Counted from the stretch's first letter, positions 3,754 to 62,084 are shown. The stretch is DNA of 64,000 nt from IMGVR_UViG_3300033997_000478:248001-312000, one strand, 5' to 3'. The notes: generated by a model from the sequence alone, not told the origin. Translations and numbers: made by a program.

Positions 3754-3787
3754 CATAACGCCCCCGCCTTCGGGCGGGGGTTCTATG
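3754..3787. terminator. CATAA-flanked GC hairpin (UUCG loop), terminator-like repeat element
   Basis: CATAA-C-GCCCCCGCC-TTCG-GGCGGGGGT-T-CTATG, starting 4 nt after the stop at 3750. Confidence 0.75.
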
Positions 3788-3795
3788 GAGGTCGC

Positions 3796-4077
3796 TTGAA
3801 CAACGATCAAATTTCCCAAGCCATTACCGAACTCAATGGCCGCATCGAACAGCTGCGCCATGAACTCCACACCAATGGGAAGCTGAGCAATGATTCGGTG
3901 GTGGTTCTGACGGCTATGCGTGAGCAGGTCGGCGAGCTGCGCAAGATCCACATTTATCAGTCGGTAAATGAGGGTAACCTCATGAAACTCGTTGCCCAAG
4001 CCAATGGTGTCACTGTTGGTCGGGTCAGTCAAATCTGCAAAGAGATGAGGGAAAAGCATGCTCGGCAAAACAACTAA
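3796..4077 (+). CDS. Small protein with a C-terminal helix-turn-helix-like motif
   Basis: TTG start with GGAGG RBS. N-terminal coiled-coil-like stretch, then MKLVAQANGVTVGRVSQICK, which follows an HTH pattern. Confidence 0.55.
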   Translation: MNNDQISQAITELNGRIEQLRHELHTNGKLSNDSVVVLTAMREQVGELRKIHIYQSVNEGNLMKLVAQANGVTVGRVSQICKEMREKHARQNN

Positions 4078-4291
4078 GCCCATTTTCACCCTCCCACCGA
4101 TCATCAACACTGGTTTGAAGCGGGGTGAATTTGCATTGCAGATGGTCATGCCCCACGCAGGCACACCCATCAAGTCAGATTTCGTCGGCGGCCTAGTCCG
4201 GCAGATGCATACCGACGGCAAGATCACCGACCAGCAGCTGGAAGATTTCTACAAGAAGCGCCTCGAGAAGATGGCGCCTTTCGGTCTGTAA
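4058..4291 (+). CDS. Hypothetical protein (77 aa)
   Basis: ATG with GAGG/GGA upstream, overlapping the previous stop region. Fills the gap in a same-strand run. Confidence 0.55.
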   Translation: MLGKTTKPIFTLPPIINTGLKRGEFALQMVMPHAGTPIKSDFVGGLVRQMHTDGKITDQQLEDFYKKRLEKMAPFGL

Positions 4292-4318
4292 CTCATTCAT
4301 TCAAGGAGAGCAGTACAG

Positions 4319-4672
4319 ATGTCTGAAGCATACCACGCCCCCAATACCCTGATTCCCATCAACACCATCATCGAAGATTACAGCGGCACGCCTTACCTGG
4401 CATCGCTGGCATTCTTCTGGGAAGTCGAGTTGGCGGCGATCTATCAGCAGCACCCGCATCTCAACCCCACTGCATTCTTCAACTTCGACTACGACGAAGA
4501 AGAGATCCAAGAAGAGCTGTTCAAGGTCTTGGTTCAGAAGAACCTGCTGAAGAAAGTCGAGCCCAATTTCACTGCAATGACCTACCTCAATCACAAGAAC
4601 AACACCGCCGACACCATGCTGTTGTCAGTGACTACGGAACTGCGTGGACCGGTCGACAAGGTCAGTGCATAA
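4319..4672 (+). CDS. Hypothetical acidic protein (117 aa)
   Basis: AAGGAG RBS and typical codon bias. Ends at the convergent hairpin pair. Confidence 0.7.
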   Translation: MSEAYHAPNTLIPINTIIEDYSGTPYLASLAFFWEVELAAIYQQHPHLNPTAFFNFDYDEEEIQEELFKVLVQKNLLKKVEPNFTAMTYLNHKNNTADTMLLSVTTELRGPVDKVSA

Positions 4673-4701
4673 CCCATTCCATCCGTTGATGGCGTAGGCG
4701 G

Positions 4702-4789
4702 CATAGACGCCTCTCCCAAAGGAGAGGCGCTTGCCTTTTGGTAAGGGGCCTCCATCTGGAGGCCCCTCTTTTTATGCCCTTTTTTTTTG
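4702..4789. terminator. Tandem hairpins at a convergent junction (bidirectional terminator)
   Basis: CATAGA-CGCCTCTCC-CAAA-GGAGAGGCG, then AGGGGCCTCC-ATCT-GGAGGCCCCT-CTTTTTATGCCC and a T9 run, between the stops at 4672 (+) and 4792 (-). Confidence 0.75.
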
Positions 4790-4791
4790 GC

Positions 4792-7680
4792 TTACAGAGG
4801 GGGCAGGGACATGTCGCCACCGCCGCCTTCCTCGCCAGTACCGGTTTCATCCGCCGGCGGTTCACCGCCAGTTTCATCGCCCGGAGGCACGTCCAACGCA
4901 TCACCACCGCCGACGTCCATGCCGGGGTCCAGGAGATCATCGCTCGGATTGGCCGGAGCGCTCTGGTAGTCATAGCTACCACCGCCACCGAAGTCGTCAT
5001 TGGGACCGACGATCTTCTTCAGGCGTTCCACGGCCGGGCCAGTGCGACGCTGGGTCGTTGCCAGTGCGTACATCACATGCAGCAGCGACTTGGACATCGA
5101 CTTGACATGGTCCTCGATACCGCGGATCAGGTCAGGCTGTTCGTCCGGGTCCGGATTGGTCAGCAGGGTGAAGATTTCCGGCATGACGTTGTTGTCAGCC
5201 ATCCAGTCACGCATGATCTTGGCCTTGGCCGCCTCCTTGACCATCGGCACCAGATCCTTCAGATCGCCCAGACCCTGTTCGGTCAGGTAAGCTTCATTGA
5301 TCCAGTTACCCAGGCACTTGTCCACGAATTCTTCGCGAGAATTGTAGGCGCTGGCCTGTGCTTCGGCCGTAGCCATATCCGGCTTGGGCAGTCGCAGACG
5401 CAGAGCTTGCAAGAACTCCATGATGACCGCATCGCGACCCATGGCTTGCAGATCTTCCAGACGCTCGCTCATGCTCTCCATCGAGGCCGAGGTCTTACCC
5501 TTGGTCAGCGCATCACGCTGATCCTTGGCGTCCTTGGAGATCTCGTTGGCGCGCTGCTGTTCACGGGTGAGCTTGTTGCGGTTCTCATCCACCAGCTTGC
5601 GCAGCTCGGCCATCAAGGCGCCGTCGGCCAGTACGTACTTGATGACGAAGTCGTTGAGGAAGCCCTCAAACTCGGTCTGGTAGGTCAGCACGCGCTTGGC
5701 CAGCAGCAGGTTGTTGGCCAGGACCGAAGTAGCGAAGTCCGCACCTTGACCGGCATCGACCATGTCCGGGCTCAGACCCATCGCCTGCAAGTGCGCATCG
5801 CGCAGCTTGTCGGTGAAATCGGTATCAGGCTTGACACGGTTGGACTGGCGCTCGGTGACATCCATCTTGATTTCGGGGTAGCGGGTGTTACCCGTCACTA
5901 CCACGTCAATCGATGCGCGCTGCAGGTAGCTGTTGATGTCCACCGGATTGGTGGCGCCCAGCGGGAAGATGCCCTGACGGGTCTTGGCGAACTCGTGCAG
6001 CAAGAACTCCACCGTCTGCGACGGATTGGGATCGGTCGGCTCCAGCTGGATAGCCAGCTGCGTGCGGTTGATCGAGTTCTTGATACCGGCCATGGCATCA
6101 GCCAGCAGGCTGACCACGCGGATACCGCCGAGCACCTTGGACTGCTGCAGCAAGGACTGGCCGATGCCGTACTTGTTGTAGTCGAAGGCAATGTAGACCA
6201 TCATCTGCGCCGGCACGTAGAGCACCTTGGTGCGCTGGTGGGCCATACGACGGGCAAACATCACGCGGTAGATTTCTTCCGGCACCGTCACTTCCAGCTG
6301 ACGGCCGTACGGACCTGCTTCCAGACGCTGGGTCAGCTCGCGGTCGATCATGCGACCATACACGCGGGCCATTTCTTCGATCTCGGTCTGACGGCTGGTT
6401 TCCTGTCCCATCAGAGCGCGCTTGGCCTGAGCCAAGATCTGCGAGCCCATGGACGAATTCGTGTTGAGCGAATTGGCCATGTCGGTGAAGTAGTCGCGCT
6501 GGTCGACCGAGTTGATCGGGTTGCCCAGTTCATCCAGCAGGATGAAGTAACCCAGATGCTTGCGCGGCGCGCCTGGCTGGTGGACCGGAATGACCGATTC
6601 CGACGGCAGCTTCATCACCGTAGGGTGGCCGATCGTATCGCGGGCGATCTCGTGGTTGGTCTTGATGATCTCCAGCGGCACGTGCGCTTGGCTGAGCTTA
6701 CGGCGGGTGCCGAGGTTGTATTCGGTGTACGCACCGAAGCTTTCCTGGGAGACCGCAAACTGCACGCCGTTGACCTGCAACATGCCCTGCTTTTGCATGA
6801 TGGCATCGATGCGATCTTGAGCCATGCGTTCACGCAGGGCAGGCATCTTCAAGATGCTGGGGTTGTCCACCACTTCCATGAGGGTGTCAACTTCCATCTT
6901 GTCGCCGGCCTTGATGCCGTTCTCTTCATCATCGACTACCGCGTTCATGCCGATGACCATCTTCGGCACGTAGGTATGGGTGCCGTAGCTGCCATTGCCC
7001 GACAATGCTTCCAGGCCCAGGTTCATCGCAGCGCCGTTCTTGGGTGCGACGGGATTGCCCAGATAACCCAGATGGCGCAGGTTGTCGTCCTTGACCTGGT
7101 CGTTGATGCTTTCCATCGTAACCCGGCCCACCGAGTTGATCGCAACGTCGATGGAGTTCTCCGGCAGGATCAGCAACGGGTAGGAGCCGGTCATGAAAAG
7201 CGCGTCTTCCAGCGAAGGTGTCAACAAGTCGCTAATCTTGTAGACCTTCTCAAAATGCTCTTCGATAACGCCTTGCATGGCGCTGGCCAGGTCGCTGCTG
7301 AAGCGATTCTGTTCCAGACCGAAGTTGATGCTGGTGGTCACCATGTCCTTCGGGGACAGGATCGAGCTGGTGAGGATCTGCATGGCCAACTGCGTCTCCG
7401 GCAGCAGCTGGAAGATGCTGCGGGCGTCGTTGACGTCATTGGCCGTCATGTCGCTGATCTTGGTCAGCAACGACAGATCCAGATGCTCGATGGACTTGTT
7501 CTTACCAGCCTTGGCATCGGTGGACAGACCACCAACACCGACACGCTGTGACGGTACTTCCGGGACCAGTTTTGACATGATCGCAGCCATGCCCGTTTCC
7601 CGCGCGTCGGGAAGCATTCGGGCATATTGGGCTCGCGTGTCGACGGGGAAGACCGACGAAGTAGGCGGACGGTTATACAT
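4792..7680 (-). CDS. Probable portal protein (phiKZ gp129-like), about 962 aa
   Basis: Large ORF with an acidic G/P/D tail, divergent from the baseplate gene and near the RNAP beta-N gene as recalled for phiKZ-like phages. Start moved to ATG 7680 (GAGGT, 7 nt spacer). Assignment rests on synteny and size. Confidence 0.65.
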   Translation of the reverse strand: MYNRPPTSSVFPVDTRAQYARMLPDARETGMAAIMSKLVPEVPSQRVGVGGLSTDAKAGKNKSIEHLDLSLLTKISDMTANDVNDARSIFQLLPETQLAMQILTSSILSPKDMVTTSINFGLEQNRFSSDLASAMQGVIEEHFEKVYKISDLLTPSLEDALFMTGSYPLLILPENSIDVAINSVGRVTMESINDQVKDDNLRHLGYLGNPVAPKNGAAMNLGLEALSGNGSYGTHTYVPKMVIGMNAVVDDEENGIKAGDKMEVDTLMEVVDNPSILKMPALRERMAQDRIDAIMQKQGMLQVNGVQFAVSQESFGAYTEYNLGTRRKLSQAHVPLEIIKTNHEIARDTIGHPTVMKLPSESVIPVHQPGAPRKHLGYFILLDELGNPINSVDQRDYFTDMANSLNTNSSMGSQILAQAKRALMGQETSRQTEIEEMARVYGRMIDRELTQRLEAGPYGRQLEVTVPEEIYRVMFARRMAHQRTKVLYVPAQMMVYIAFDYNKYGIGQSLLQQSKVLGGIRVVSLLADAMAGIKNSINRTQLAIQLEPTDPNPSQTVEFLLHEFAKTRQGIFPLGATNPVDINSYLQRASIDVVVTGNTRYPEIKMDVTERQSNRVKPDTDFTDKLRDAHLQAMGLSPDMVDAGQGADFATSVLANNLLLAKRVLTYQTEFEGFLNDFVIKYVLADGALMAELRKLVDENRNKLTREQQRANEISKDAKDQRDALTKGKTSASMESMSERLEDLQAMGRDAVIMEFLQALRLRLPKPDMATAEAQASAYNSREEFVDKCLGNWINEAYLTEQGLGDLKDLVPMVKEAAKAKIMRDWMADNNVMPEIFTLLTNPDPDEQPDLIRGIEDHVKSMSKSLLHVMYALATTQRRTGPAVERLKKIVGPNDDFGGGGSYDYQSAPANPSDDLLDPGMDVGGGDALDVPPGDETGGEPPADETGTGEEGGGGDMSLPPL

Positions 7681-7729
7681 GCATGCTACCTCAAAGAGCT
7701 TTCTTTTTTCGTAAGTTGGGAGACGCCCA

Positions 7730-10480
7730 GTGTCACAGGCGCAATACAAAATCTACCTCAGCAAGGTGTTTAGCCTCGCCAAGACTCTGGTGGTCAAAAG
7801 TTCCGCTGCGGCACGGGCTATCAATACCGAGCTGGTGCGGTTGGGACACACCATCAATGAGAACGATCCGGCGAGCTGGAAGTACTATCTCCACCTGAAC
7901 GGTGAGTACCATTACACTGACCGGGTGATGAAGATCACGTCACTGGATACGCAATCAGAAATAACTTTTAACAAGAATGCCCTTACGGTACATTTGGCCA
8001 CTGCGCGTGAGTACGCCAGTGGCGGACAGTACTACAAGACCCTGGTCAGTCAGTTCCCCGACCAAGAGGATCTGATTCGCGGCATTCTCAATCCAGTGGA
8101 CATCTCCACGGCCATTGCGGCCGAGGACGGACAGATCCTGTACTACAATCCGGCTCTGGTGGAAGAGAATGAGGAAAACCTCATCCCCAAGCTGGAGCAA
8201 TGGTGCAAAGACTTCTCCCGGCGTTGGTTCGTTCGAGCCTACACGCTGGTGGATGATCTGTACGTGGCTGCACACCTGAGTACGATGTACACGCTCATCC
8301 CCATGGTGGTGACGAGCATTCGGGCGGCCAATTGTCATACCAATTACGCGCACTCCTTCCATATCCGCGAGTATCTGAACAGTCATCAGTACTTGGGTGA
8401 TGAGGTTGACTACCTCACCACCAAGCAACGGCTGTGGCTGTATCGGCAGATTCGCTTCCTCGAGCGCAATGCCGGTAAGCAGTCCACGTTCAAGGAGCTG
8501 GTCAAGAACCTGCTCACCGAACGCAACCTGCCGCTGTCGGAATGGAACATGCGACATGACCTGAGCAAGATGCCTGATGAAGAGCTGGGGCCCCGAGCCT
8601 CGTTCTATCGGGAATCGCTCAACATGGACCTGAGCATTGCCGGTGTGGAAACCCGCAACATCACCGAGATGCTCGAGGCGGAGATTCCGGTAGCGCGTAA
8701 CAACGAACGGGCCATCCAGGACAACGTCACTGACATCCGCAAGAAGATCGAACACAGCCAGGGTGATTTCCTCAAGACCAAGGTCTTGGAATCCTCGGTG
8801 CTGGATCTGTCTGATGCTGGTTACTTCTCACTGGCTGACACCATGCTCAACCATTGGCTGTACCTGTCCCAAGTGGGGCGGTACACGGCAGTGATCAGTG
8901 TGGAGAATCCGGCCAACGGTGGCAACTTGGTGCTCTCGGCCAAGGAAGCGTTCATTGTCTTCCTGTACGTGTTCAACAAGTCGATGGGCATTGAGCTGGT
9001 GGACGTACCGGTGTTGCAAGCCAACAACGTGCGTAAGCTATCCACGCCGCTGCGCCCTGAGATTGAGGGCATGATCGACAAGAAGCTGTTGAACCCGTAC
9101 GTGGTGGATGGTCTGTACAAGGCGATCGATCTGATCCCGCCGATCATCTCTACCGAAGCGTTCAACCGCACGGTGGCCAAGATCCACGAGGGCTTGCAGA
9201 TTCATCGCTGGATCTGGACGACCCGTGAACATAAGGACGAGCGCGGTCAGGTGGAAGCGGCAGCCATGCACTTCTATCACGACTGGACCTGCCGACTGGA
9301 CGCTCCAGAGCTCTACCCGAAATGGCTTTCCGATCGTGGCCTGGACCTGTTGAACCTGACGCGCCTGGAATGCTCGATTCTGGCAGAGCAGCTGATCTCC
9401 CGTGCAACCGGTGCAGATCTGTTCGCTACCTACAGCGTACGTGACATCCAGACTGCCATGCTGCGCCTGATGACGCAGCTGTCCTCGTACTCGATCCAGT
9501 TCCTGCAATCGATCAACCCCTCGCCGATCATCTTCATCGATTGGCAGCCGCCGCGCATCGGCAACATCGAAGCTGACGGTGGTGATGACTTCAACGTGGA
9601 CATGGCAACGGTATACGTGGAGGACATCCACGCCCAAGGCCTGGCCAAGTTTGACATCCAGCAAGTGGGTTGGTTGGATGACATGGACCTGAAGGCGCGC
9701 GGTTACGATCGCATGCGCATCGAGTCGGACATCAACGCCACCATTACCAGCAACACCGGGTACTTCTTCAAGGTTGAGATCCCGCAGATTGACGTGGTGG
9801 GCGATGAGTTCCCTGAGTCGCTGATCACCGACATCACCAAGTACACCGAGCATTACCTGCCACAGGATCGTCAGGATCTGAGTGAAGCCTTTGATCACCT
9901 CAACAGTCCGCATTACGCGCTGACGCAGGCCGATAAGGACGAACTGACCGAACGCTGGAATGAGCGTCCGGCCGATCCGCCGATCACCCTGATCGCAGAG
10001 GGCCTGCAGCTGCCGAACCTGTACGATGAAATCAGTGGCGTCGATGTGATGCGCACGCCCACCCTGACCGGGTCGGTCTCGCTACCCACGATTGACTACC
10101 CGCTGGTTGATGGCAAGATGGAACTGGATACCTTGCTGTATCCGGGCCTGGTCATGGACATCGTGCTGGACGTCTACGGTTATCCGGTACTGCGTGATGT
10201 GGCCGAACTTGATGGCCTGCGTTATCCGATGACCCAGCAGACGCTGGTGCTGGACACGCTGACTTACCCGCATCTGAATATGGCAGGTGAGTTGGACGGG
10301 CTGGATTATCCGGAGTATGTCGACAGCGGCAAGATCTCTGAGTTCACCTATCCGTTCGTGCTGGCCTTCAACGCACTGGATGGTCTGTCCTTCGGTCTGA
10401 ACGGCTCCATGTCGTTCAACACGCTGGACTACCCGCCGGTTCCGCCGTTGGATCTGGACACGTTGGATTACCCGCAATAA
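7730..10480 (+). CDS. Baseplate/virion structural protein (phiKZ gp128-like, wedge-type) with C-terminal LDxLxYP repeats
   Basis: GTG start with GGGAG RBS, 916 aa. N-terminus ENDPASWKYYLHLNGEYH fits this family from recall, and it heads the tail block. Confidence 0.65.
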   Translation: MSQAQYKIYLSKVFSLAKTLVVKSSAAARAINTELVRLGHTINENDPASWKYYLHLNGEYHYTDRVMKITSLDTQSEITFNKNALTVHLATAREYASGGQYYKTLVSQFPDQEDLIRGILNPVDISTAIAAEDGQILYYNPALVEENEENLIPKLEQWCKDFSRRWFVRAYTLVDDLYVAAHLSTMYTLIPMVVTSIRAANCHTNYAHSFHIREYLNSHQYLGDEVDYLTTKQRLWLYRQIRFLERNAGKQSTFKELVKNLLTERNLPLSEWNMRHDLSKMPDEELGPRASFYRESLNMDLSIAGVETRNITEMLEAEIPVARNNERAIQDNVTDIRKKIEHSQGDFLKTKVLESSVLDLSDAGYFSLADTMLNHWLYLSQVGRYTAVISVENPANGGNLVLSAKEAFIVFLYVFNKSMGIELVDVPVLQANNVRKLSTPLRPEIEGMIDKKLLNPYVVDGLYKAIDLIPPIISTEAFNRTVAKIHEGLQIHRWIWTTREHKDERGQVEAAAMHFYHDWTCRLDAPELYPKWLSDRGLDLLNLTRLECSILAEQLISRATGADLFATYSVRDIQTAMLRLMTQLSSYSIQFLQSINPSPIIFIDWQPPRIGNIEADGGDDFNVDMATVYVEDIHAQGLAKFDIQQVGWLDDMDLKARGYDRMRIESDINATITSNTGYFFKVEIPQIDVVGDEFPESLITDITKYTEHYLPQDRQDLSEAFDHLNSPHYALTQADKDELTERWNERPADPPITLIAEGLQLPNLYDEISGVDVMRTPTLTGSVSLPTIDYPLVDGKMELDTLLYPGLVMDIVLDVYGYPVLRDVAELDGLRYPMTQQTLVLDTLTYPHLNMAGELDGLDYPEYVDSGKISEFTYPFVLAFNALDGLSFGLNGSMSFNTLDYPPVPPLDLDTLDYPQ
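10075..10480 (+). repeat. About 10 tandem (L/I)D/x-x-L-x-YP peptide repeats, period about 12-15 aa
   Basis: LPTIDYP, LDTLLYP, LDVYGYP, LDGLRYP, LDTLTYP, LDGLDYP, ISEFTYP, LDGLSFG, FNTLDYP, LDTLDYP in the translation. Confidence 0.85.
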
Positions 10481-10484
10481 GGAC

Positions 10485-10513
10485 AGGCGGGGGTTGAAAG
10501 ACCCCCGCCTTTT
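10485..10513 (+). terminator. Intrinsic terminator-like hairpin (GAAA loop)
   Basis: AGGCGGGGGTT-GAAA-GACCCCCGCCT followed by TTT. Confidence 0.65.
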
Positions 10514-10532
10514 CCCCAGCCAAGAGACTCCC

Positions 10533-10988: not shown

Positions 10989-10996
10989 GGACGCCC

Positions 10997-13320: not shown

Positions 13321-13329
13321 GGAGACTCC

Positions 13330-15321: not shown

Positions 15322-15326
15322 GACGA

Positions 15327-15359
15327 CATAACGCCCCCTCCTTCGGGAGGGGGTTTATG
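15327..15359. terminator. CATAA..TTATG-flanked hairpin element
   Basis: CATAA-C-GCCCCCTCC-TTCG-GGAGGGGGT-TTATG. Confidence 0.75.
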
Positions 15360-15439
15360 CTGCCCTTTTTTCTTAGTCCTATCTTGTGTGCGCCGCTGTT
15401 GCGGCTAAGAATTTCTTCGCCCTCTTTGAGGAATGTTGC

Positions 15440-25052: not shown

Positions 25053-25086
25053 CCATAGAGCCCGGCCTTTCGGCCGGGCTCTTCTT
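25053..25086. terminator. Hairpin after fibre B
   Basis: CATAG overlapping AGAGCCCGGCC-TTTC-GGCCGGGCTCT, followed by TCTTT. Confidence 0.6.
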
Positions 25087-26000: not shown

Positions 26001-26030
26001 CTAAGGAGGTTTCGGCCTCCTTAGTTTATG
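26001..26030 (+). terminator. Hairpin plus TTTATG between the two tip genes
   Basis: CTAAGGAGGT-TTCG-GCCTCCTTAG-TTTATG. Confidence 0.7.
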
Positions 26031-27518: not shown

Positions 27519-27549
27519 CATAGCGGAGGTCTTCGGACCTCCGTTTATG
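27519..27549. terminator. CATAG..TTATG-flanked hairpin element
   Basis: CATAG-CGGAGGTC-TTCG-GACCTCCG-T-TTATG. Confidence 0.75.
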
Positions 27550-29635: not shown

Positions 29636-29668
29636 CATAACGCCCCCGCCCGTAGGCGGGGGCTTATG
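29636..29668. terminator. CATAA..TTATG-flanked hairpin at a convergent junction
   Basis: CATAA-C-GCCCCCGCC-CGTA-GGCGGGGGC-TTATG. Confidence 0.8.
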
Positions 29669-37211: not shown

Positions 37212-37251
37212 GTATGGCACGATGTTAAAATATACGTGTACCATAACATAG
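37212..37251. promoter_or_regulatory. Divergent late-promoter candidates (TATG on both strands)
   Basis: AT-rich intergenic region with GTATGG (+, 37212) and TACCATAACATAG (two minus-strand TATG). TATG is the described phiKZ late-promoter core. Only a 4-mer. Confidence 0.4.
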
Positions 37252-38559: not shown

Positions 38560-38596
38560 CATAAAGCAGGGGCCCTTCGGGGCCCCTGCACTTATG
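38560..38596. terminator. CATAA..TTATG-flanked hairpin at a convergent junction
   Basis: CATAA-A-GCAGGGGCCC-TTCG-GGGCCCCTGC-AC-TTATG. Confidence 0.8.
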
Positions 38597-43802: not shown

Positions 43803-43837
43803 CATAAGCCCCCTCCCGGACGGGAGGGGGCGTTATG
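43803..43837. terminator. CATAA..TTATG-flanked hairpin at a convergent junction (reverse orientation)
   Basis: CATAA-GCCCCCTCCCG-GA-CGGGAGGGGGC-G-TTATG. Confidence 0.8.
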
Positions 43838-49227: not shown

Positions 49228-49263
49228 CATAAGCCCCCGCCCGTGATGGGCGGGGGCGCTATG
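49228..49263. terminator. CATAA..CTATG-flanked hairpin at a convergent junction (reverse orientation)
   Basis: CATAA-GCCCCCGCCC-GTGAT-GGGCGGGGGC-G-CTATG. Confidence 0.8.
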
Positions 49264-52064: not shown

Positions 52065-52084
52065 CCCCCGCCTTCGGGCGGGGG
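52065..52084 (+). terminator. GC hairpin with a core identical to the 3761-3780 element
   Basis: CCCCCGCC-TTCG-GGCGGGGG followed by TCTT. Confidence 0.6.
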
Positions 52085-53602: not shown

Positions 53603-53658
53603 GGTCATCGGGGTTTCCTGATGGCCGTCTGAATGCGCCCCACCTTCGGGTGGGGCAA
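53603..53658 (+). other. Tandem stem-loops 3' of the recombinase gene
   Basis: GGTCATCGGG-GTTT-CCTGATGGCC (G.U pairs on +) and GCCCCACC-TTCG-GGTGGGGC. No U-tract. Confidence 0.55.
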
Positions 53659-56144: not shown

Positions 56145-56147
56145 CGG

Positions 56148-56182
56148 CATAACGCCCCCTCCCGGATGGGAGGGGGCTTATG
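56148..56182. terminator. CATAA..TTATG-flanked hairpin at a convergent junction
   Basis: CATAA-C-GCCCCCTCCC-GGAT-GGGAGGGGGC-TTATG. Confidence 0.8.
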
Positions 56183-56183
56183 G

Positions 56184-56684
56184 TCATTCTTCAGCAGCGT
56201 CTTCTTCCAGACGCCCGGAGAGCACATCATCGATGTTGATGTTGCTGATCTCCACGGCATCTTCGCCAGGCACCTTTTCCAGCTTAGGTAGGCCTGCCAC
56301 GTCCTTGACATTCGGACGCGAACGCGTCTCGCCTTCGGAGACATCACCCGGTTCGCGACGGCGCTGATTCTTACCGCCCAGTTGGAGGGCGCGCAGAACA
56401 GCGGCAGCAGCCAGGGCTTCAGCGGCGTTGCTCGATTGCTTGGCGCCGATCTGCTGGCGCTTGAGGATCTGGCTTTCCAGGTCCTTCATGTTGGCAAGAA
56501 CGATGCGCGCCTCTTCCGGGTCCGGGGGGAGAGCGCCGCCGTTCTTCTCGAAGTCGTACAGCACCTGCCGCATACGGATCTTTTGCATCTGATCCAGCAG
56601 CTCGTCCTTGTCCAGCAGGGCGATAGCTTCCAGCGGCGGCGTGCGCGGTACGTCGATGTTGCAAGGATCGTCTTTGACGGACAT
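56184..56684 (-). CDS. Hypothetical helical protein (166 aa)
   Basis: Start moved to ATG 56684 because the longer ORF overlaps the HNH gene. Helical and charged. Confidence 0.65.
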   Translation of the reverse strand: MSVKDDPCNIDVPRTPPLEAIALLDKDELLDQMQKIRMRQVLYDFEKNGGALPPDPEEARIVLANMKDLESQILKRQQIGAKQSSNAAEALAAAAVLRALQLGGKNQRRREPGDVSEGETRSRPNVKDVAGLPKLEKVPGEDAVEISNINIDDVLSGRLEEDAAEE

Positions 56685-56751
56685 AACACACCATGTAAAA
56701 AATTCTTGATCACATAATATCAGAATGACAGCCTGTACAAAGCTTTTAACA

Positions 56752-57333
56752 ATGAACAAGACCGCATCCCCCAATTACAGCCGTTGGGCAGAAATGCACC
56801 GACGCTGCACCAATCCAGCTCATCCCGCCTACGCACAATATGGTGGGCGTGGCATTCGCGTTTGTGCTCGCTGGGATGAGCTGGCCAACTTCGACGCCGA
56901 CATGGGCTATCCTCCAACTCCCAATCACAGCATCGAACGCATCGACGTCAACGGGCATTACGAGCCCGGTAACTGTACGTGGGCCACGCCAAGGGAGCAG
57001 GCACGAAACCGCACCAATAACGTCCTCCATCAGTTCGAAGGTAAGCATTACTTTCTTCAAGATCTTGCGGAGGAAAAGGGCGTATCTTTCCGCACACTAG
57101 ACGATCGAATTCGTCGACAAGGAATGACGCTGGAGGAAGCTCTCAGCAAGCCGACCACACGCCAAGGTAGTTCGTTTGTGGAAGTGGACGGCGTGAAGAT
57201 GTCCAAGGCGCAGGCGGCTCGCAAGTTCGGCATTAGTCCCACCCTTCTCAGTCAGCGACTGAATAAGGGCATGTCGGTCAAAGAGGCTCTCACCAAACCA
57301 CGTGTGATCACTGGACGGCCGCGAAACACTTGA
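56752..57333 (+). mobile_element. Free-standing HNH homing endonuclease-like gene (193 aa)
   Basis: M..RC.NP....Y..YGGRGI.VC.RW...NF..DMG...SIERIDVNGHYEPGNC.WAT..EQ.RN motif plus repeated C-terminal DNA-binding units. AT-richer than its flanks. Confidence 0.85.
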
Positions 57334-57407
57334 TTATTTTTTACTGAGTCGCCCTACTTAGTGTGGTTCAAAAGTCATTACTTACATACGCCACAAGGAA
57401 CAGAAGT

Positions 57408-57974
57408 ATGCGTCAAGGAATCAAAACAGCCGTGACGGGCTGGGTCCAAAGAATAGGGCAGCTTTTCAGGGGAGAACGCACCCCTTGGCAAGTTGCACGT
57501 GGACTGGTGACCCGGCAGCACGGCTCTGTGTACTCGCTACAGGGGCTCGAGATGGCATGTGAGTACCTTACTCGCAACAACCGTCCGCAGGCCCTTACAG
57601 CGCTTCCCATGAGCATTCGTAGGGAGCTGGTGGTGATCAGCTGCTTTGCGAATATCGACCTACACATCCAGTCGTTGGTGGCCGTTGTCAGGCACATCCA
57701 AGGGCGCGATGATATGCCTCCTGAATTACCCACCGTCGCACCGAATATCCCAGTTACCTTGGATGGGTATCTGACCGACATTCACGACCATCGGGTTCAG
57801 TTGGCAACCGTTGTGGAGTACCTGACTCGCTGGTCCACAGCGTTGCGAGAAGAGATGCAGAAGTTCGAGGCCAACGAGCCTGAGCGCTTTGCGTATCTGG
57901 ATCGCAAACTCCATCATCTCTACAGTGCCACCTTCAACGTGATGGAAGCGTTGATCGTTGCCTCGGAGCGATAA
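57408..57974 (+). CDS. Hypothetical protein (188 aa)
   Basis: AAGGA RBS before ATG 57408. Confidence 0.65.
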   Translation: MRQGIKTAVTGWVQRIGQLFRGERTPWQVARGLVTRQHGSVYSLQGLEMACEYLTRNNRPQALTALPMSIRRELVVISCFANIDLHIQSLVAVVRHIQGRDDMPPELPTVAPNIPVTLDGYLTDIHDHRVQLATVVEYLTRWSTALREEMQKFEANEPERFAYLDRKLHHLYSATFNVMEALIVASER

Positions 57975-58022
57975 TCACAACGCTGGGTTCCGCCACCTAG
58001 CGAACTATCGAAGAGGAAACCG

Positions 58023-58460
58023 ATGTCATACAACAACAATGACGAAGACATTCTGTCAGATACCGACAAAGGCGTCAAAGAAGCGCGCGGTGTTTTGGCA
58101 GTGATCTTCCGTCAGTTCTTGAAGATCCGCGGCATTACCGGCTATGTGTGGGAGCGGTTGATGACCACTTGGCTGGATGATCCGGGTAACGGGGTGGAAG
58201 ACAACTCCCGTGCTCGCTCAACGGCTCGTGGTAATCTCAACAGCGCCCTGCGTCGGCCGGACATGACGTGGCGTGTGTTCATGCGTGCACTGGAGTTTCT
58301 GCGTGCAGCGCGTGTGGACTTCATCGTCAAGGTGACGTGGTTTGACGGAAGTACTGATACCGTCACCGCGCGTCTGAAGGACCTCAGCGGACCGATGCGC
58401 CGAGAGTCTGACGATGATGAAGACAACCCTCCGGCCAACCGCAACCGGCCGATCAAGTAA
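58023..58460 (+). CDS. Hypothetical protein (145 aa)
   Basis: GAGGA RBS. RGNL..AL....MTW..F motif recalled from phiKZ-like hypotheticals. Confidence 0.75.
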   Translation: MSYNNNDEDILSDTDKGVKEARGVLAVIFRQFLKIRGITGYVWERLMTTWLDDPGNGVEDNSRARSTARGNLNSALRRPDMTWRVFMRALEFLRAARVDFIVKVTWFDGSTDTVTARLKDLSGPMRRESDDDEDNPPANRNRPIK

Positions 58461-58468
58461 ACCATTTT

Positions 58469-58498
58469 GACGAGGGGTTACGGCCCCTCGTTTTTATG
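58469..58498 (+). terminator. Hairpin plus TTTATG
   Basis: GACGAGGGGT-TACG-GCCCCTCGTT-TTTATG. Confidence 0.65.
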
Positions 58499-58511
58499 CC
58501 AACCTACAGGA

Positions 58512-59645
58512 ATGGAAAAGATGAAACAACTGCTTCCCGAATACGACCGCCAGAGCGACGGCGTTGACTACATCGCCATCAACGTACGCGCTGCCACTCC
58601 GCTGGGTCGTGCTCTGAGCCTGGGCACTGCATGGCGTGTGGAAACCAACTACCACGGCAACTTCTCCTCGCTCGGTGGTGTGGTGCGTTACTTCGCCCGT
58701 CCCAATGATCCGTTCTGCCGTGAAGCCACTGGCGCTGAACAGGACATGGAGATCTCCACCACGTTCGATGACGTCTACAGTGATGTCTACACCCAGCTGA
58801 TGTGGGAAACACTCTCCAAGATCGACTGGGTGATGGCGGCGATGGTGGCGAACAGGCTGCCGTTCGTCTACTACGTCAACTACGGTGACGGCGATGGCCT
58901 TCAGCCCGTACGTATGCCGCAGTGGTTTGCCGAAGCAGTTGAGAAGTGCGTCAGCAACGCACGTGCTGGCAAGTTCGTCAAGCAGGCTGAAAAGTCGGCC
59001 GTACCCGGCCCGCTGCAACCGTGGAGCTTCCCTTCAACGCCTGTCCGGGGTGAAGAGTCGTCGCCGCTGGAGCAGTGCGTGGAGAAGGAAGTCAAGCCAC
59101 GTCGTGCGCGCAAGACTGTGGTGACCACCACTGATCCGACGATCGATCTCAAGCCCGCCGCGGCGGAAGTCGGATCGGATTTGCCACCGTGGGCGCTGGG
59201 AGGGGACAAACCGCAAGCGGCAGGTCCGGTGAATGATGAACCAACCAAACAGCCTTTCGAAAACACCAAGTTCGAGAAGAAGGCTGCCAAGAAGCGTGTG
59301 GTCAAGAAGGTGCCGGAGTTCAAGGATTCGATTTCCTTCCTCGACAAAGGCAAAGCCGAGATCCAGTTGTGGTTCAAGCGTCTGCAGGCTCTGAGTGTCG
59401 AGCAGAAGGCGCTGGTGGATCAGATCATCGAACCGTTCGACGACCTCGTCGGCAAGCCGGTACCGGACGAAGAGATCCGTGACACGCACCTGCCGTTGAT
59501 GCTCAAGATGTTGGAGAACATCAAGGACAAGCAGGTTGCTGACTCCATTGCCCGTGGCGTCTGGACCTACGTCTTCGATGCGCCCTACGGTACGCCCGAT
59601 GTGATCGCCAAGTTGCAAAGTTACTACGTGCCGGAAGAGGAATGA
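58512..59645 (+). CDS. Protein with a degenerate NADAR-like N-terminal domain, a low-complexity linker and a helical C-terminal domain
   Basis: DGVDYIAINVRAATPLGRALS aligns with DGIDHINVYSKGATQLGQDLS of the next gene. Confidence 0.6.
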   Translation: MEKMKQLLPEYDRQSDGVDYIAINVRAATPLGRALSLGTAWRVETNYHGNFSSLGGVVRYFARPNDPFCREATGAEQDMEISTTFDDVYSDVYTQLMWETLSKIDWVMAAMVANRLPFVYYVNYGDGDGLQPVRMPQWFAEAVEKCVSNARAGKFVKQAEKSAVPGPLQPWSFPSTPVRGEESSPLEQCVEKEVKPRRARKTVVTTTDPTIDLKPAAAEVGSDLPPWALGGDKPQAAGPVNDEPTKQPFENTKFEKKAAKKRVVKKVPEFKDSISFLDKGKAEIQLWFKRLQALSVEQKALVDQIIEPFDDLVGKPVPDEEIRDTHLPLMLKMLENIKDKQVADSIARGVWTYVFDAPYGTPDVIAKLQSYYVPEEE

Positions 59646-59737
59646 TGTGAGCCGTAAAGGCTAACGATCAACCCGACGGCGATCCCTAAAAAGAAGCGCC
59701 CTCTCCAACATGGCGCTCCCGCCAATCGTGATTTCCT

Positions 59738-60346
59738 ATGTCCAACGAAACCTCCAACCCGGAAGCTCTCGAAGTCCTGCCGGCGGATGCATTGCCCGAT
59801 CCCAAGCGTGACGGGATTGACCATATCAACGTCTACTCCAAAGGAGCGACGCAGCTGGGTCAAGACCTGAGCAACTTCGCCCATGTCCCCTTCGAGCATC
59901 CCGACCACGGGTTCTTCGCTTCGATGGAGGCCTACTGGTACTGGCTCAGCACCGGCAAGCAGCATGACAACCTGCGTCGTCTGTACAAGGCCACAGCCAA
60001 GGCTGCCGGTATCCGCCTGCCGAAGGTGGAGATGGATCCGGAGTTGTTCCGCAGCCTGATCTGCGATGGCCTGAAGCTGAAGATCATGCAGAACCGCAAA
60101 CTGCGTGATGAGCTGAAGAAGTCGCACCTGCCGTTCCGTCACTACTTCTTCTACGGTAGTGCGCCGAACTGGGTGATCAAGGAAAAGGCCGACCATCGCT
60201 ACCAGATGGAATGTCTGGAATCGATCCGCAAGGCGCTGCAGCAGAATCAGCCGGTCCTGCTCAGTGACGGGCGCTCGGCCCTGGGCATGGAAATCCAGGC
60301 CGTGGTCGAAGATCCGATCCCCTTCGAGCTGCGACTGGATCCGTAA
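59738..60346 (+). CDS. NADAR-like (YbiA/T4 gp30.3-related) protein, 202 aa
   Basis: LSNF...PF......F.SMEAYW...KIMQNRKLRDEL follows the NADAR pattern LSNF / F.s.E.y / Kf.qn..lr..L. Confidence 0.6.
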   Translation: MSNETSNPEALEVLPADALPDPKRDGIDHINVYSKGATQLGQDLSNFAHVPFEHPDHGFFASMEAYWYWLSTGKQHDNLRRLYKATAKAAGIRLPKVEMDPELFRSLICDGLKLKIMQNRKLRDELKKSHLPFRHYFFYGSAPNWVIKEKADHRYQMECLESIRKALQQNQPVLLSDGRSALGMEIQAVVEDPIPFELRLDP

Positions 60347-60352
60347 CTGAAT

Positions 60353-60380
60353 GCCGGGAGCCTTCGGGCTCCCGGCTATG
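60353..60380 (+). terminator. Hairpin plus TATG, then a T-rich run
   Basis: GCCGGGAGCC-TTCG-GGCTCCCGGC-TATG; the last TATG base sits at 60380 and a T-rich run follows. Confidence 0.7.
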
Positions 60381-60444
60381 CCGTCCTTTCTTTTTTGTCT
60401 GTCCCCTCCGGCTAAGGGTATGATAAGACCTTAGAGACAATTCC

Positions 60445-62040
60445 ATGTCCAATCCGAATTACAAGCCGATGACGGCTGCCAATGCTCCGAAGATCAATAC
60501 CCCCGGTGGTGGGTATAAGACCGAGAGCTTGCTGACCAACATCATCAAAACCCAAGGTGCCGCTTTCGTCCAGAAGAAGGGCGCGGAGCTGGCCAGCAAG
60601 CAGTTGTCCAAGCAGACTGACAAGCTGATGGGTAAGCTTGGCGGTAAGCTGGGTGGCAAGCTCGGTAGTAAGTTCTCCTCCTCTGGCGGCCTGATGGGTT
60701 CGGCGGAGAATCTGGCGGCCAATGCTGCGCGTTCGGTCACTGACAAGCTGCAATCGGCCATTGGTGGTAAGGCCACCGCTCTGCTGGGTAACAAGTTCGG
60801 TGGTGTGGCGGGTCAGCTCGGTGGTAAGGTGGCTGGCGCCATCGCTAACGCGGCTACCAAGACGGTCACCAATCTGGCTACCGGTGCGATCAACAAAGTC
60901 TCCTCGGCTGTCTCTGATGCTACTGCTGGCGTCAAGGGTAAAGCGCAGAGCATGCTCACCTCAGCGCTGGGCGCGGCTGGTGGCGGTATGTTGGGTAACG
61001 TACTAGGTAAGGTCGGTGACACCGCTGCCAAGAATCTGGCAGGTGCCTCGTTTGCACCGGGCTTCTTGGAAACCGGCCCGCGTGCTGAGACCAAGGCAAT
61101 CGACCCCTACGGCGTGTCGGACAACAACATCGTCTCCACGATTACCGATACCGTCAAGGATGCCGCAGCTACCGCTCTGGAAGACGTGCGCGCCACGGGC
61201 ACCGGGTTGATGGGCGATCTGATGCCGCTCAAGCTGAAGGACCTGAAGAACTTCAAGCAGACCAAGGAGCGTCTGGCTGCACGTGTCACGGACATGTTCG
61301 GTGGTCGCGAGTCTGCGGTCAAGTCGATGCCCGGTAGCATGCAGTCCACGATCGGCAACGGTCTGGGTCTTCCCGATGACGCCTACGACAAGCTCGTGGT
61401 GACCATTGGTGATGCGGTCAAGACCTACGATGCCGAAGACGTGGAAAATGCCCGTCAGGTTTACAAGGTCATCGAACAGGTCTCCTCCTCGCCGGCAGGT
61501 GTTCAGTTCGTTGACGTGGCGGCTAAGTCCTCGCTGCTGGCTGGCTGCATGCGTGAAGCAATCATGCTGGGCGATTTCAGTGCAGTGGAAGTGCTGCTGG
61601 AGAACCAGGATGACGAGTCCAGCTACAACGCCTTGTACGCCAACGTGCTGGTCGCTCTGGAATACTCCGAGCTGGACACCGTGCTGCTGATGATCAACCG
61701 ACTGGGTACTGAGCGTATCCTTTCGCTGGTTCCCAACGCAGCACAGACCCTGATGGCCAATTACAAGCTGCCCAAGGATGTGACCTCCGAAGGCTACAGC
61801 GCCGAACTGATTGCGCTGGTGGCTGCCCTGGATCTGCTCAAGCCGAACTGGGACAAGATCGTGCGCAACGGCGTGTGGACCAGTGACCTGCGTGTCTTTG
61901 CAGAACTGAGTGAGGATGCGAAGTCGCTGTTCCTGCGCAATGACAATTACGTGGTACAGACACTGATCGCACCTGACTTCATTGACGCTCCGGACATGGC
62001 CGAAGAGTTCAAGAAGATCTACGACCTGACACCCATCTGA
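60445..62040 (+). CDS. Virion structural protein candidate (531 aa) with a Gly/Ala/Lys-rich N-terminal third
   Basis: Long ORF. GKLGGKLGGKLGSK and AGQLGGKVAG repeats. Convergent with a baseplate-hub-like gene. Confidence 0.7.
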   Translation: MSNPNYKPMTAANAPKINTPGGGYKTESLLTNIIKTQGAAFVQKKGAELASKQLSKQTDKLMGKLGGKLGGKLGSKFSSSGGLMGSAENLAANAARSVTDKLQSAIGGKATALLGNKFGGVAGQLGGKVAGAIANAATKTVTNLATGAINKVSSAVSDATAGVKGKAQSMLTSALGAAGGGMLGNVLGKVGDTAAKNLAGASFAPGFLETGPRAETKAIDPYGVSDNNIVSTITDTVKDAAATALEDVRATGTGLMGDLMPLKLKDLKNFKQTKERLAARVTDMFGGRESAVKSMPGSMQSTIGNGLGLPDDAYDKLVVTIGDAVKTYDAEDVENARQVYKVIEQVSSSPAGVQFVDVAAKSSLLAGCMREAIMLGDFSAVEVLLENQDDESSYNALYANVLVALEYSELDTVLLMINRLGTERILSLVPNAAQTLMANYKLPKDVTSEGYSAELIALVAALDLLKPNWDKIVRNGVWTSDLRVFAELSEDAKSLFLRNDNYVVQTLIAPDFIDAPDMAEEFKKIYDLTPI

Positions 62041-62043
62041 CAG

Positions 62044-62084
62044 CATAGACCCCCTCTCCTCCTTGCGGGGGAGAGGGGGCTATG
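62044..62084. terminator. CATAG..CTATG-flanked hairpin at a convergent junction
   Basis: CATAG-A-CCCCCTCTCCTCC-TTGC-GGGGGAGAGGGGG-CTATG. Confidence 0.8.

What the first reader, a model, noticed from the sequence alone, without database searches (positions are those of the whole stretch)
3754..62084. Candidate non-canonical terminator class: GC hairpin followed by (T/C)TATG, two-sided at every convergent junction
Seen: all 7 convergent junctions carry a GC hairpin bracketed by CATA on the left and TATG on the right, so each strand reads hairpin-then-TATG. They lie at 4702-4776 (composite pair), 29636, 38560, 43803, 49228, 56148 and 62044. Three co-directional junctions (26001, 58469, 60353) have the TATG only on the transcribed side, three have both (3754, 15327, 27519), and one has only the opposite side (25053). 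Most lack a classical U-tract. Inference: hairpin+TATG is a strand-specific stop or 3'-processing signal for the phage RNAPs. Known: TATG is also the phiKZ late-promoter core, so one motif may serve both initiation and termination.
Basis: partly seen in the sequence, partly recalled or inferred. Interest (0 to 1): 0.8.

Follow-up and report, generated by a model that had tools for sequence, protein, structure and literature searches.

The report
phiKZ-type hairpin–TATG transcription terminators
The GC hairpins followed by TATG at gene ends are real and far from chance, but they match the terminator motif already mapped in the giant phages phiKZ and 201phi2-1, here found in an uncultivated high-GC relative.

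Summary
All 15 coordinates are exact. All 7 convergent junctions carry CATA-hairpin-TATG. TATG lies beside strong hairpins 21 times against 0.8 expected.

The class is not new. The window is a phiKZ-like (Chimalliviridae) jumbo phage. ONT-cappable-seq of phiKZ already defined a terminator consensus, C-rich hairpin + TTATKYYGT (PMC10914365), and 201phi2-1 has the same motif (PMC11512511). The window's sites read ...GGGGGCTTATGCCGT.

The eight 201phi2-1 termination sites printed in that paper all fall at TATGYY|G, about 8 nt past the stem. So the RNA ends ...UUAUGYY. The same eight also terminate in uninfected host cells.

I found the motif in 12 phiKZ-clade phages (38-59% GC). It is absent in SPN3US/SEGD1, EL-like phages, AR9 and XacN1.

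The shared promoter/terminator idea holds only for the 4-nt core. Terminator TATGs are followed by YYG (76/124). Hairpin-less, promoter-positioned TATGs are not (12/89).

One result is unexplained. At co-directional junctions the tail is as common on the antisense side as on the sense side (31 v 31 of 76), although hairpin loops are sense-optimised.

No transcript data exist for this phage.

The parts
3754..3787 (.). Two-sided element at a co-directional (+,+) junction: CATA 3754, hairpin 3761-3780 (UUCG loop on + RNA), TATG 3784
   Evidence: minus-strand tail GTTATGCCGT matches the phiKZ consensus
4702..4776 (.). Composite bidirectional terminator at a convergent junction: CATA 4702, hairpin 4708-4729, hairpin 4744-4767, TATG 4773. 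The tails are on the outer sides, so each transcript crosses both hairpins
   Evidence: The same two-hairpin arrangement lies at the orthologous junction in RTH11 (L001 22938-22996) and LucasX (L002 22993-23052). A similar pair lies at a different convergent junction in phiKZ (L003 14215-14297)
15327..15359 (.). Two-sided element at a co-directional (+,+) junction: CATA 15327, hairpin 15334-15353 (UUCG loop), TATG 15356
25054..25082 (.). Hairpin 25057-25082 at a co-directional (+,+) junction, with the TATG tail only on the antisense side (CATA 25054). The sense tail is UCUUUCGAGG
26001..26030 (+). One-sided element: hairpin 26001-26024 (9 bp), TATG 26027
27519..27549 (.). Two-sided element at a co-directional (+,+) junction: CATA 27519, hairpin 27524-27543 (UUCG loop), TATG 27546
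29636..29668 (.). Bidirectional terminator at a convergent junction: CATA 29636, hairpin 29642-29663, TATG 29665. By the 201phi2-1 rule the + strand RNA would end near 29670
   Evidence: (1 mismatch to the phiKZ consensus)
38560..38596 (.). Bidirectional terminator at a convergent junction: CATA 38560, hairpin 38566-38589, TATG 38593, which overlaps the stop codon of the minus-strand gene
43803..43837 (.). Bidirectional terminator at a convergent junction: CATA 43803, hairpin 43808-43831, TATG 43834
49228..49263 (.). Bidirectional terminator at a convergent junction: CATA 49228, hairpin 49233-49257, TATG 49260. In related strains only the loop differs, including an inverted loop (GTGAT v ATCAC)
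56148..56182 (.). Bidirectional terminator at a convergent junction: CATA 56148, hairpin 56154-56177, TATG 56179
58470..58498 (+). One-sided element at a co-directional junction: hairpin 58470-58491, UUUUAUG tail, TATG 58495
60353..60380 (+). One-sided element at a co-directional junction: hairpin 60353-60376 (UUCG loop), TATG 60377 (CTATGCCGT). A separate promoter-type TATG lies at 60419
62044..62084 (.). Bidirectional terminator at a convergent junction: CATA 62044, hairpin 62050-62079, TATG 62081
108..1730 (+). Ortholog of phiKZ GP123, the beta-like subunit of the non-virion RNA polymerase. In phiKZ this subunit binds the non-template TATG of late promoters
   Evidence: BLASTP 30% identity over 507 aa, E = 1e-86. 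Stacking residues F151, H185 and H331 are identical, and Y399W and Y406F are conservative
37213..37250 (.). Example of hairpin-less TATGs in promoter orientation in a divergent region: + TATG 37213, minus TATGs at 37242 and 37247. Similar ones lie at 7623(-), 40145(-), 40189(+), 46250(+), 46268(-), 50959(-), 50980(+), 56713(-) and 60419(+). These are candidate late promoters, not part of the terminators

Best explanation
These are the intrinsic transcription terminators of a phiKZ-like (Chimalliviridae) jumbo phage. They have the same conserved design already mapped in phiKZ and 201phi2-1: a stable GC-rich RNA hairpin, usually with the C-rich arm first and often a UUCG or GNRA loop. A short AU-rich tail embedded in the sequence YTATGYYGY follows 0-3 nt after the stem. 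By analogy with the printed 201phi2-1 termination sites, the transcript ends ...UUAUGYY-3', about 7-9 nt past the stem, with the conserved G as the next, unincorporated base. The hairpin and the weak UUAU part of the RNA:DNA hybrid would drive release. The pyrimidine/G step looks like the elemental pause signal of multisubunit RNA polymerases (recalled from general knowledge, not tested here). A perfect hairpin reads the same on both strands, so placing the tail on both flanks (CRRCATAR ... YTATGYYG) gives a bidirectional terminator, and this is what sits at all seven convergent junctions. On a single transcript the upstream CAUAA can also pair with UUAUG and lengthen the stem, which in 201phi2-1 goes with stronger termination. 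Shown: the sequence pattern, its enrichment, its identity to the published motif, its spread through the phiKZ clade, and the position of published 3' ends relative to it. Inferred: that the same 3' ends form in this phage, and the pause/hybrid mechanism.
For: Phage identity: PHROG families typical of phiKZ-like phages; nearest relatives are Xanthomonas phages RTH11 and LucasX at about 53% aa identity; a GP123 ortholog is present. Published motif: phiKZ consensus BCCYCCCCHWWDGGGRRGGBYTTATKYYGT from 61 mapped terminators, with 6 bidirectional regions. In 201phi2-1, motif A (n = 59) resembles it, 15 termination sites are bidirectional, and A/B co-occurrence gives an elongated hairpin. Match in the window: the 3' half of the consensus matches 7 sites at up to 2 mismatches against 0.16 expected. 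YTATGYYGY matches 15 sites against 4.4 expected, and 14 of the 15 lie beside hairpins. Enrichment of TATG tails beside strong hairpins (observed v expected): window 21 v 0.8, RTH11 16 v 0.59, LucasX 20 v 1.15, phiKZ 16 v 1.63, Xoo-sp14 11 v 0.4, RP12 14 v 0.82, Eowyn 15 v 0.82, FLC9 7 v 0.3, 201phi2-1 9 v 0.46, Moabite 9 v 0.6, Ea277G 6 v 0.28. RNA-level structure: at co-directional junctions the sense-strand loops read TTCG 25 v CGAA 3, and GAAA 7 v TTTC 3. Stop position: all eight 201phi2-1 termination coordinates printed in PMC11512511 lie beside a hairpin plus TATG (TATA at one site). Seven of the eight fall on the second base after the tetramer, that is TATGYY|G, 8 nt after the stem. All 7 convergent junctions are two-sided.
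Against: There are no transcript data for this phage. The only candidate 'RNA' runs turned out to be DNA-like contigs of related strains. 3' ends mapped by ONT-cappable-seq do not separate termination from processing. At co-directional junctions the tail shows no preference for the transcribed side (31 sense v 31 antisense of 76; 12 antisense-only), which a plain 'terminator of the upstream gene' model does not predict. Six strong intergenic hairpins in the window lack a TATG tail on the transcribed side and have pyrimidine-rich tails instead, so TATG is not required at every gene-end hairpin. Nothing I tested explains why the G of TATG is invariant.
Confidence: 0.8

Rival explanations
1. The TATG after each hairpin is a late promoter (G = +1) for the non-virion RNA polymerase. 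The hairpin is just the preceding terminator, so the pair is a terminator-promoter cassette rather than a single termination signal.
For: TATG with G as the start site is the phiKZ late-promoter core and is necessary for nvRNAP transcription. The window encodes the TATG-binding subunit ortholog. Hairpin-less TATGs sit in promoter orientation in all six divergent regions. At co-directional junctions a sense-side TATG lies 12-84 nt upstream of the next start codon.
Against: At all 7 convergent junctions such promoters would fire only antisense into the facing gene. At co-directional junctions the tail is as frequent pointing backwards as forwards. Hairpin-adjacent TATGs carry a conserved YYGY extension that promoter-positioned TATGs lack (14/21 v 0/14 here; 76/124 v 12/89 overall). 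The phiKZ P119L promoter reads TATGTAG. Published 201phi2-1 coordinates at these sites are 3' ends, not starts. At 60353 a second, promoter-type TATG lies at 60419, 26 nt before the start codon.
Confidence: 0.1
2. The elements are RNA processing or stability sites. An endonuclease cuts at or after UAUG(YY) next to the hairpin, or 3' exonucleases trim back to it. The 3' ends would then reflect RNA maturation, with RNA polymerase reading through.
For: 3'-end mapping cannot tell processing from termination. The loops are the very stable UUCG and GNRA types on the sense RNA, as expected for protective 3' hairpins. Many gene-end hairpins lack the TATG tail on the transcribed side.
Against: The end lies a fixed ~8 nt beyond the stem, the classical intrinsic-termination distance, whereas exonuclease trimming would stop closer to the stem. 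Cloned 201phi2-1 elements reduce downstream reporter expression in uninfected cells as well as or better than lambda T0. The motif is absent from chimalliviruses of other clades that infect similar hosts (SPN3US and SEGD1 on Salmonella, EL-like phages on Pseudomonas). That ties it to the phage machinery rather than to a host RNase.
Confidence: 0.07
3. The symmetric CATA-palindrome-TATG units are DNA-level elements: REP-like mobile palindromes, or binding or cleavage sites for a phage protein. They would only secondarily act on transcription.
For: Several stems are near-identical (GCCCCC[G/T]CC). The tail is orientation-symmetric at co-directional junctions, and sense and antisense tails co-occur more than expected (Fisher p = 0.004). 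Loops invert between strains, as expected for recombination across inverted repeats.
Against: The elements sit only at gene ends. Individual elements are positionally conserved between phages with about 50% protein identity, for example the composite after the virion-protein gene and the CCCCCTAGG hairpin between tail-fibre genes. Loops are strand-biased for the sense RNA. The spacing between half-sites varies from 20 to 71 nt, which does not fit a dimeric DNA binder. The same tail is kept across genera while the stems differ. I did not search for a REP-type transposase.
Confidence: 0.03

Closest known systems
phiKZ conserved intrinsic-terminator motif (Putzeys et al. 2024, microLife, PMC10914365)
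   Same: A C-rich-first GC hairpin followed by TTAT and K-YY-GT, located at gene ends, with bidirectional versions between convergent genes. Window tails such as GGCGGGGGCTTATGCCGT fit the consensus with 1-2 mismatches.
   Different: Stems here are longer and richer in GC (8-13 bp, in a 58% GC genome against 37%). The fifth tail base is always G here, where phiKZ allows G or T. No 3'-end mapping exists for this phage.
201phi2-1 terminator motifs A and A/B (PMC11512511)
   Same: The same hairpin+TTATG tail. Two-motif elements form an elongated stem, equivalent to the two-sided CATAA...TTATG units here. The printed termination sites fall at TATGYY|G.
   Different: Those elements were tested in vivo, and in uninfected host cells. 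Nothing has been tested for the window's phage.
Canonical bacterial rho-independent terminators, including bidirectional ones
   Same: A GC hairpin, an RNA end about 7-9 nt after the stem, a weak AU-rich hybrid next to the stem, an upstream A-rich segment pairing with the tail, and two-sided use at convergent genes.
   Different: The U-tract is reduced to UUAU or YUAU and is followed by a conserved G-Y-Y-G. Only 5 of 13 plus-strand tails pass a lenient 5-T-in-8 rule. The tail is a sequence motif rather than a composition bias.
[quoted passage not shown]
   Same: The identical tetranucleotide. The window encodes a GP123 ortholog with the stacking residues of the TATG pocket conserved. Hairpin-less TATGs occupy promoter positions in the window.
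   Different: Promoter TATGs have no upstream hairpin and no YYG extension. In promoters the G is the first transcribed base, whereas at terminators the RNA ends 2 nt after it.
Elemental and sigma-dependent pausing of multisubunit RNA polymerases (recalled from general knowledge, not tested here)
   Same: The stop is at a pyrimidine with G as the incoming base, and G-rich sequence lies about 10 nt upstream. A promoter-like non-template element lies just upstream of the stop.
   Different: No pausing data exist for phiKZ-type polymerases. The resemblance is a lead only.

Membership tests
phiKZ-type terminator motif (hairpin + TTATKYYGT) | GC-rich stem-loop with a C-rich 5' arm and G-rich 3' arm | tested here: met
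   Perfect stems of 8-13 bp at all 14 sites. Most have the C-rich arm first (GCCCCCGCC, GCCCCCTCCC, CCCCCTCTCC); a few are mixed (27524, 58470, 60353)
phiKZ-type terminator motif (hairpin + TTATKYYGT) | TTAT (YTAT) beginning 0-3 nt after the stem, followed by K, YY, G, T/Y | tested here: met
   In 21 tails: Y before TATG in 21/21, YYG after TATG in 14/21, G at the third base after TATG in 17/21. Consensus matches 7 v 0.16 expected; YTATGYYGY 15 v 4.4
phiKZ-type terminator motif (hairpin + TTATKYYGT) | Located at 3' ends of genes, with two-sided versions between convergent genes | tested here: met
   All are intergenic. None of the 22 in-gene hairpins carries the tail. 7/7 convergent junctions are two-sided
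phiKZ-type terminator motif (hairpin + TTATKYYGT) | Genome encodes phiKZ-type split multisubunit RNA polymerases | tested here: met
   window:108-1730 is the GP123 (nvRNAP beta-like) ortholog, E = 1e-86. The other subunits lie outside the window and were not examined
phiKZ-type terminator motif (hairpin + TTATKYYGT) | Transcript 3' ends accumulate at the motif during infection | not testable with these tools
   The only runs holding this sequence are DNA-like contigs of related strains. This feature is inferred from 201phi2-1 coordinates
Canonical rho-independent terminator | U-tract of about 7-8 nt (at least 5 T in 8) directly after the hairpin | tested here: not met
   By my count, only 5 of 13 plus-strand tails reach 5 T in 8. 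The consensus scan of 1-20000 flagged 4744, 4708, 15337, 19865 and 10485(-), and the total was not above shuffles (19 v 14.6)
Canonical rho-independent terminator | RNA released about 7-9 nt after a GC-rich hairpin, independent of factors, by bacterial RNAP | tested here: inconclusive
   The geometry fits: published 201phi2-1 ends lie 8 nt after the stem, and the cloned elements work in uninfected P. chlororaphis. Nothing was measured for the window's own elements
phiKZ late promoter (TATG, G = +1) | TATG placed upstream of, and pointing into, the gene it drives | tested here: not met
   For hairpin-adjacent TATGs: all 14 tails at convergent junctions point into the antisense of the facing gene, and co-directional tails point backwards as often as forwards
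phiKZ late promoter (TATG, G = +1) | No conserved sequence immediately downstream of TATG | tested here: not met
   Hairpin-adjacent TATGs have a conserved YYGYY. Hairpin-less upstream TATGs do not
REP/BIME-like mobile palindromes | Associated RAYT-type transposase and strain-variable copy number or position | not tested
   I made no transposase search. Seven related strains have the elements at the same junctions

The most novel reading that the evidence does not exclude
The terminator tail re-uses the polymerase's own promoter-recognition pocket. In phiKZ the core beta-like subunit GP123, not a dissociable sigma, binds non-template TATG at -3..+1. An elongating enzyme that exposes TATG in its bubble just after a hairpin could therefore re-bind it. 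It would then scrunch through the next bases and stall at the fixed YY|G two bases later. This would be a core-subunit analogue of sigma-dependent pausing that converts a 4-nt AU tract into an efficient terminator. It would explain the invariant G, the fixed TATG-YY-G spacing, and why only the phiKZ clade has this tail. The equal frequency of antisense-facing tails would then mean these genomes are insulated against pervasive antisense transcription arising from a 4-bp promoter core.
Probability: 0.15. Interest if true: 0.7.

Novelty: new member of a known kind. Interest (0 to 1): 0.3.

Why it matters
As a finding it is ordinary: it re-discovers, from raw sequence, the conserved phiKZ/201phi2-1 terminator. 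It has three uses.

1. It extends that motif to an uncultivated 58% GC phage, and by my survey to 12 phages of six or more host genera. The motif is missing from SPN3US-, EL- and AR9-type relatives. So it marks a clade and is a reliable aid for annotating operon ends in metagenomic jumbo phages.

2. Combining the printed 201phi2-1 coordinates with the sequences fixes the stop at TATGYY|G. The papers do not state this.

3. Two points are open and testable with existing phiKZ reagents and datasets. Why does a terminator tail contain the promoter core that the polymerase core subunit binds? And why do co-directional junctions carry the tail facing backwards as often as forwards?

Tried and rejected
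1. RNA evidence. The runs holding this sequence were laid on 56050-62049. They are DNA-like contigs of strains 90-99% identical, so they give no transcript ends. The loose ends at 56147 and 56182 are other copies of the same hairpin.

2. Supplementary termination-site tables of both ONT-cappable-seq papers are not held.

3. Covariation at orthologous junctions. Scans of viral contigs found only identical copies. Metagenome and genome scans found nothing. Seven syntenic relatives reached through a hypervariable neighbouring gene have almost identical intergenic regions and differ mainly in the loops, so they carry no statistical power.

4. Selection against TATG inside genes. TATG is depleted relative to synonymous-codon shuffles (60 v 120, z = -6.8), but so are most TA-containing 4-mers. 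The test is not specific.

5. GP123 pocket conservation against presence of the tail. Phages with the tail keep S/T144, K/R158, H/Y185, S334, an aromatic at 406 and Q466. Phages without the tail each have two or more non-conservative changes at these positions. This is confounded by overall divergence (16-21% v 24-33% identity), so I treat it as suggestive only.

6. Rfam: no family matches in the window.

7. Stop-codon overlap as the reason for the upstream CATAA: rejected. At 3754 and 15327 the real stop codons lie upstream and the CATAA is out of frame.

8. Literature search for antisense transcription in phiKZ gave nothing usable.

Full report
WHAT THE WINDOW IS

The window has 58% GC. Its large ORFs hit PHROG families typical of phiKZ-like jumbo phages: virion proteins phrog_3004, 3222, 3293 and 3181, an RNase H-like phrog_3265, SbcC, and a UvsX-like recombinase. 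The closest annotated relatives by tblastn are Xanthomonas phages RTH11 and LucasX at about 53% aa identity. Next come Xoo-sp14, Ralstonia RP12/RP31, Burkholderia FLC9, Klebsiella Eowyn and the Pseudomonas phiKZ group. An identical stretch lies on a 324-kb IMG/VR contig. The gene at 108-1730 is the ortholog of phiKZ GP123, the beta-like subunit of the non-virion RNA polymerase (30% identity, E = 1e-86).

CHECK OF THE OBSERVATION

A codon-usage gene map was later validated on three annotated relatives, where 126 of 134 annotated 3' ends were recovered. It gives seven convergent junctions, and every one carries CATA-hairpin-TATG. The junction at 4702-4776 is a two-hairpin composite with the tails on the outer sides.

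The split of co-directional sites is also as described. Three have the tail on the transcribed side only, three on both sides, and one on the opposite side only.

Among hairpins with at least 8 pairs, 21 of 82 tails carry TATG within about 9 nt of the stem end, against 0.8 expected. None of the 22 hairpins inside genes does. TATG is 7.8-fold denser in intergenic DNA than in genes, against about 2-fold for 4-mers of the same composition.

Their tails are pyrimidine-rich.

WHAT IT IS

The motif is already in the literature. ONT-cappable-seq of phiKZ located 133 termination regions. [quoted passage not shown] Six bidirectional regions lie between convergent genes (PMC10914365).

The 201phi2-1 study found 132 termination sites, 15 of them bidirectional. 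Its motif A (n = 59) 'strongly resembles' the phiKZ motif. A frequent A/B combination elongates the hairpin (PMC11512511).

The window's tails read GGCGGGGGCTTATGCCGT, GGAGGGGGCTTATGTCGC and the like. The 3' half of the phiKZ consensus matches seven sites at up to 2 mismatches, against 0.16 expected. YTATGYYGY matches 15 sites against 4.4 expected, and 14 of the 15 lie beside hairpins.

Anchoring all hairpin-adjacent TATGs gives the extended consensus Y-TATG-Y-Y-G-Y-Y, both in the window (n = 21) and across nine phages (n = 124).

WHERE THE RNA ENDS

The 201phi2-1 paper prints eight termination-site coordinates in its main text. I fetched those positions. All eight lie beside a hairpin followed by TATG, or TATA in one case. 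Seven fall exactly on the second base after the tetramer, for example GGCTGGGCTTTATGC[C]G and GGACTGGCTTTATGT[T]G. The eighth is one base earlier.

The RNA therefore ends ...UUUAUGYY-3', 8 nt past the stem, and the conserved G is the next base. That is the classical hairpin-to-end distance. The pyrimidine/G step resembles the elemental pause signature of multisubunit polymerases (from memory, not tested).

All eight elements also terminated in a two-reporter trap in uninfected P. chlororaphis. Four outperformed lambda T0, and the elongated-stem (two-motif) elements were the strongest. So the design works with host RNAP too, and 'non-canonical' overstates it.

PHYLOGENETIC SPREAD

I ran the same hairpin-tail analysis on 40-50 kb from other phages. 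TATG is the first or second most enriched 4-mer in the tails of these phages (observed v expected):
- RTH11: 16 v 0.59
- LucasX: 20 v 1.15
- phiKZ: 16 v 1.63
- Xoo-sp14: 11 v 0.4
- RP12: 14 v 0.82
- Eowyn: 15 v 0.82
- FLC9: 7 v 0.3
- 201phi2-1: 9 v 0.46
- Moabite: 9 v 0.6
- Ea277G: 6 v 0.28

It is also present in Goslar, at 2 v 0.33.

It is not enriched in the following phages, whose tails are T-rich:
- SPN3US: 2 v 0.65
- SEGD1: 0 v 0.74
- EL: 1 v 0.61
- EL-like GXNNA8: 2 v 0.73
- AR9: 0 v 1.15
- XacN1, a jumbo phage outside Chimalliviridae: 2 v 0.58

So the tail is a trait of the phiKZ-RP12-Eowyn-Xanthomonas-phage clade, kept across 38-59% GC.

PROMOTER VERSUS TERMINATOR

In phiKZ, TATG is the late-promoter core, with G as +1. 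[quoted passage not shown] Its non-template strand is bound in a pocket of GP123, a core subunit (PMC12809450).

The window's GP123 ortholog keeps S144, F151, H185, K190, H331, S334 and Q466, and has K158R, Y399W and Y406F.

Hairpin-less TATGs occupy promoter orientation in all six divergent regions and at 60419. These promoter-positioned TATGs lack the YYG extension:
- Window: 0/14, against 14/21 for hairpin-adjacent TATGs.
- Nine phages: 12/89, against 76/124. Fisher p = 7e-13.

The phiKZ promoter P119L reads TATGTAG. So the two signals share a 4-nt core but are distinct.

UNEXPLAINED

Across nine chimalliviruses there are 76 strong hairpins at co-directional junctions. They split as 33 with no tail, 12 sense-only, 12 antisense-only and 19 with both. 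That is 31 sense against 31 antisense. The antisense tails have the full TTATGYYGT context.

Sense and antisense tails co-occur more often than expected by chance (Fisher p = 0.004). This fits the published finding that the upstream CATAA lengthens the stem and strengthens termination (one search shows the pairing).

The antisense-only class is not explained. The hairpins themselves are clearly built for the sense RNA: loops read UUCG 25 v CGAA 3, and GAAA 7 v UUUC 3. The antisense-only elements may be latent terminators against antisense transcription, since 9% of mapped phiKZ termination sites are antisense to genes. I could not test this.

VERDICT

The termination reading is supported by homology to mapped terminators. 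Novelty: a new member of a known kind.

The most novel reading still open is that the polymerase's own TATG pocket takes part in pausing and termination. I give it about 15%.

Noticed in passing
window 7704-7714, 15366-15376, 26039-26049, 50986-50997 (all + strand): A second intergenic motif, T5-6 then 0-6 nt then TA[A/G] (e.g. CCCTTTTTTCTTAG, CTTTTTTCGTAAG). It occurs only upstream of + strand genes and never inside genes. CTAG and TTAG are 18-fold and 10-fold enriched in intergenic DNA. It may be another promoter class (early or middle).
   Followed up: partly
window 7623(-), 37213(+), 37242/37247(-), 40145(-), 40189(+), 46250(+), 46268(-), 50959(-), 50980(+), 56713(-), 60419(+): Hairpin-less TATGs in promoter orientation occur in every divergent intergenic region. 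They are candidate late (nvRNAP) promoters and have no conserved downstream YYG.
   Followed up: partly
window 10485-10510, 19865-19886, 25057-25082, 30319-30340(-), 52065-52084, 53637-53656: A second set of gene-end hairpins, mostly with UUCG or GAAA loops on the sense RNA. They have no TATG tail on the transcribed side; their tails are pyrimidine-rich (CUUGCCUUU, UCUUCCCC) at all but 53637 (AACGAGAG). The CCCCCTAGG stem at 19865 recurs at the orthologous tail-fibre junction of RTH11 and LucasX, although the proteins are only about 50% identical.
   Followed up: partly
window 49243-49247 v L021-L024: Among otherwise identical strains, the loop of the 49228 terminator is inverted (GTGAT v ATCAC and variants). 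The loops at 56148 and 62044 also differ (TTGC v GCAA). Variation is concentrated in the loops, as if the palindromes flip or are rebuilt.
   Followed up: no
window 58512-59645 (+): This gene is hypervariable: homologs in syntenic, otherwise near-identical relatives range from 99% down to 52% identity. In two relatives (L023, L026) the following 202-aa gene is replaced by a 419-aa ORF with a faint NUMOD3 (homing-endonuclease) hit.
   Followed up: no
window 56725-57974: The window has two ORFs of about 200 aa (56725-57333, 57363-57974) where seven relatives have a single 188-aa gene. This is a small indel or cassette difference between strains.
   Followed up: no
whole window: Near-identical sequence (56-100% of sampled 31-mers) is held by runs from very different sources: subsurface, soil, food fermentation, indoor and bear-gut metagenomes, and runs labelled as single organisms. 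This suggests a widespread phage or a common environmental host. The host was not identified.
   Followed up: no
window 108-1730 (+): This is the ortholog of phiKZ GP123 (nvRNAP beta-like N-terminal subunit). The residues that stack on the promoter TATG in the phiKZ structure are conserved. Across 14 phages, F151 and H331 are invariant.
   Followed up: yes
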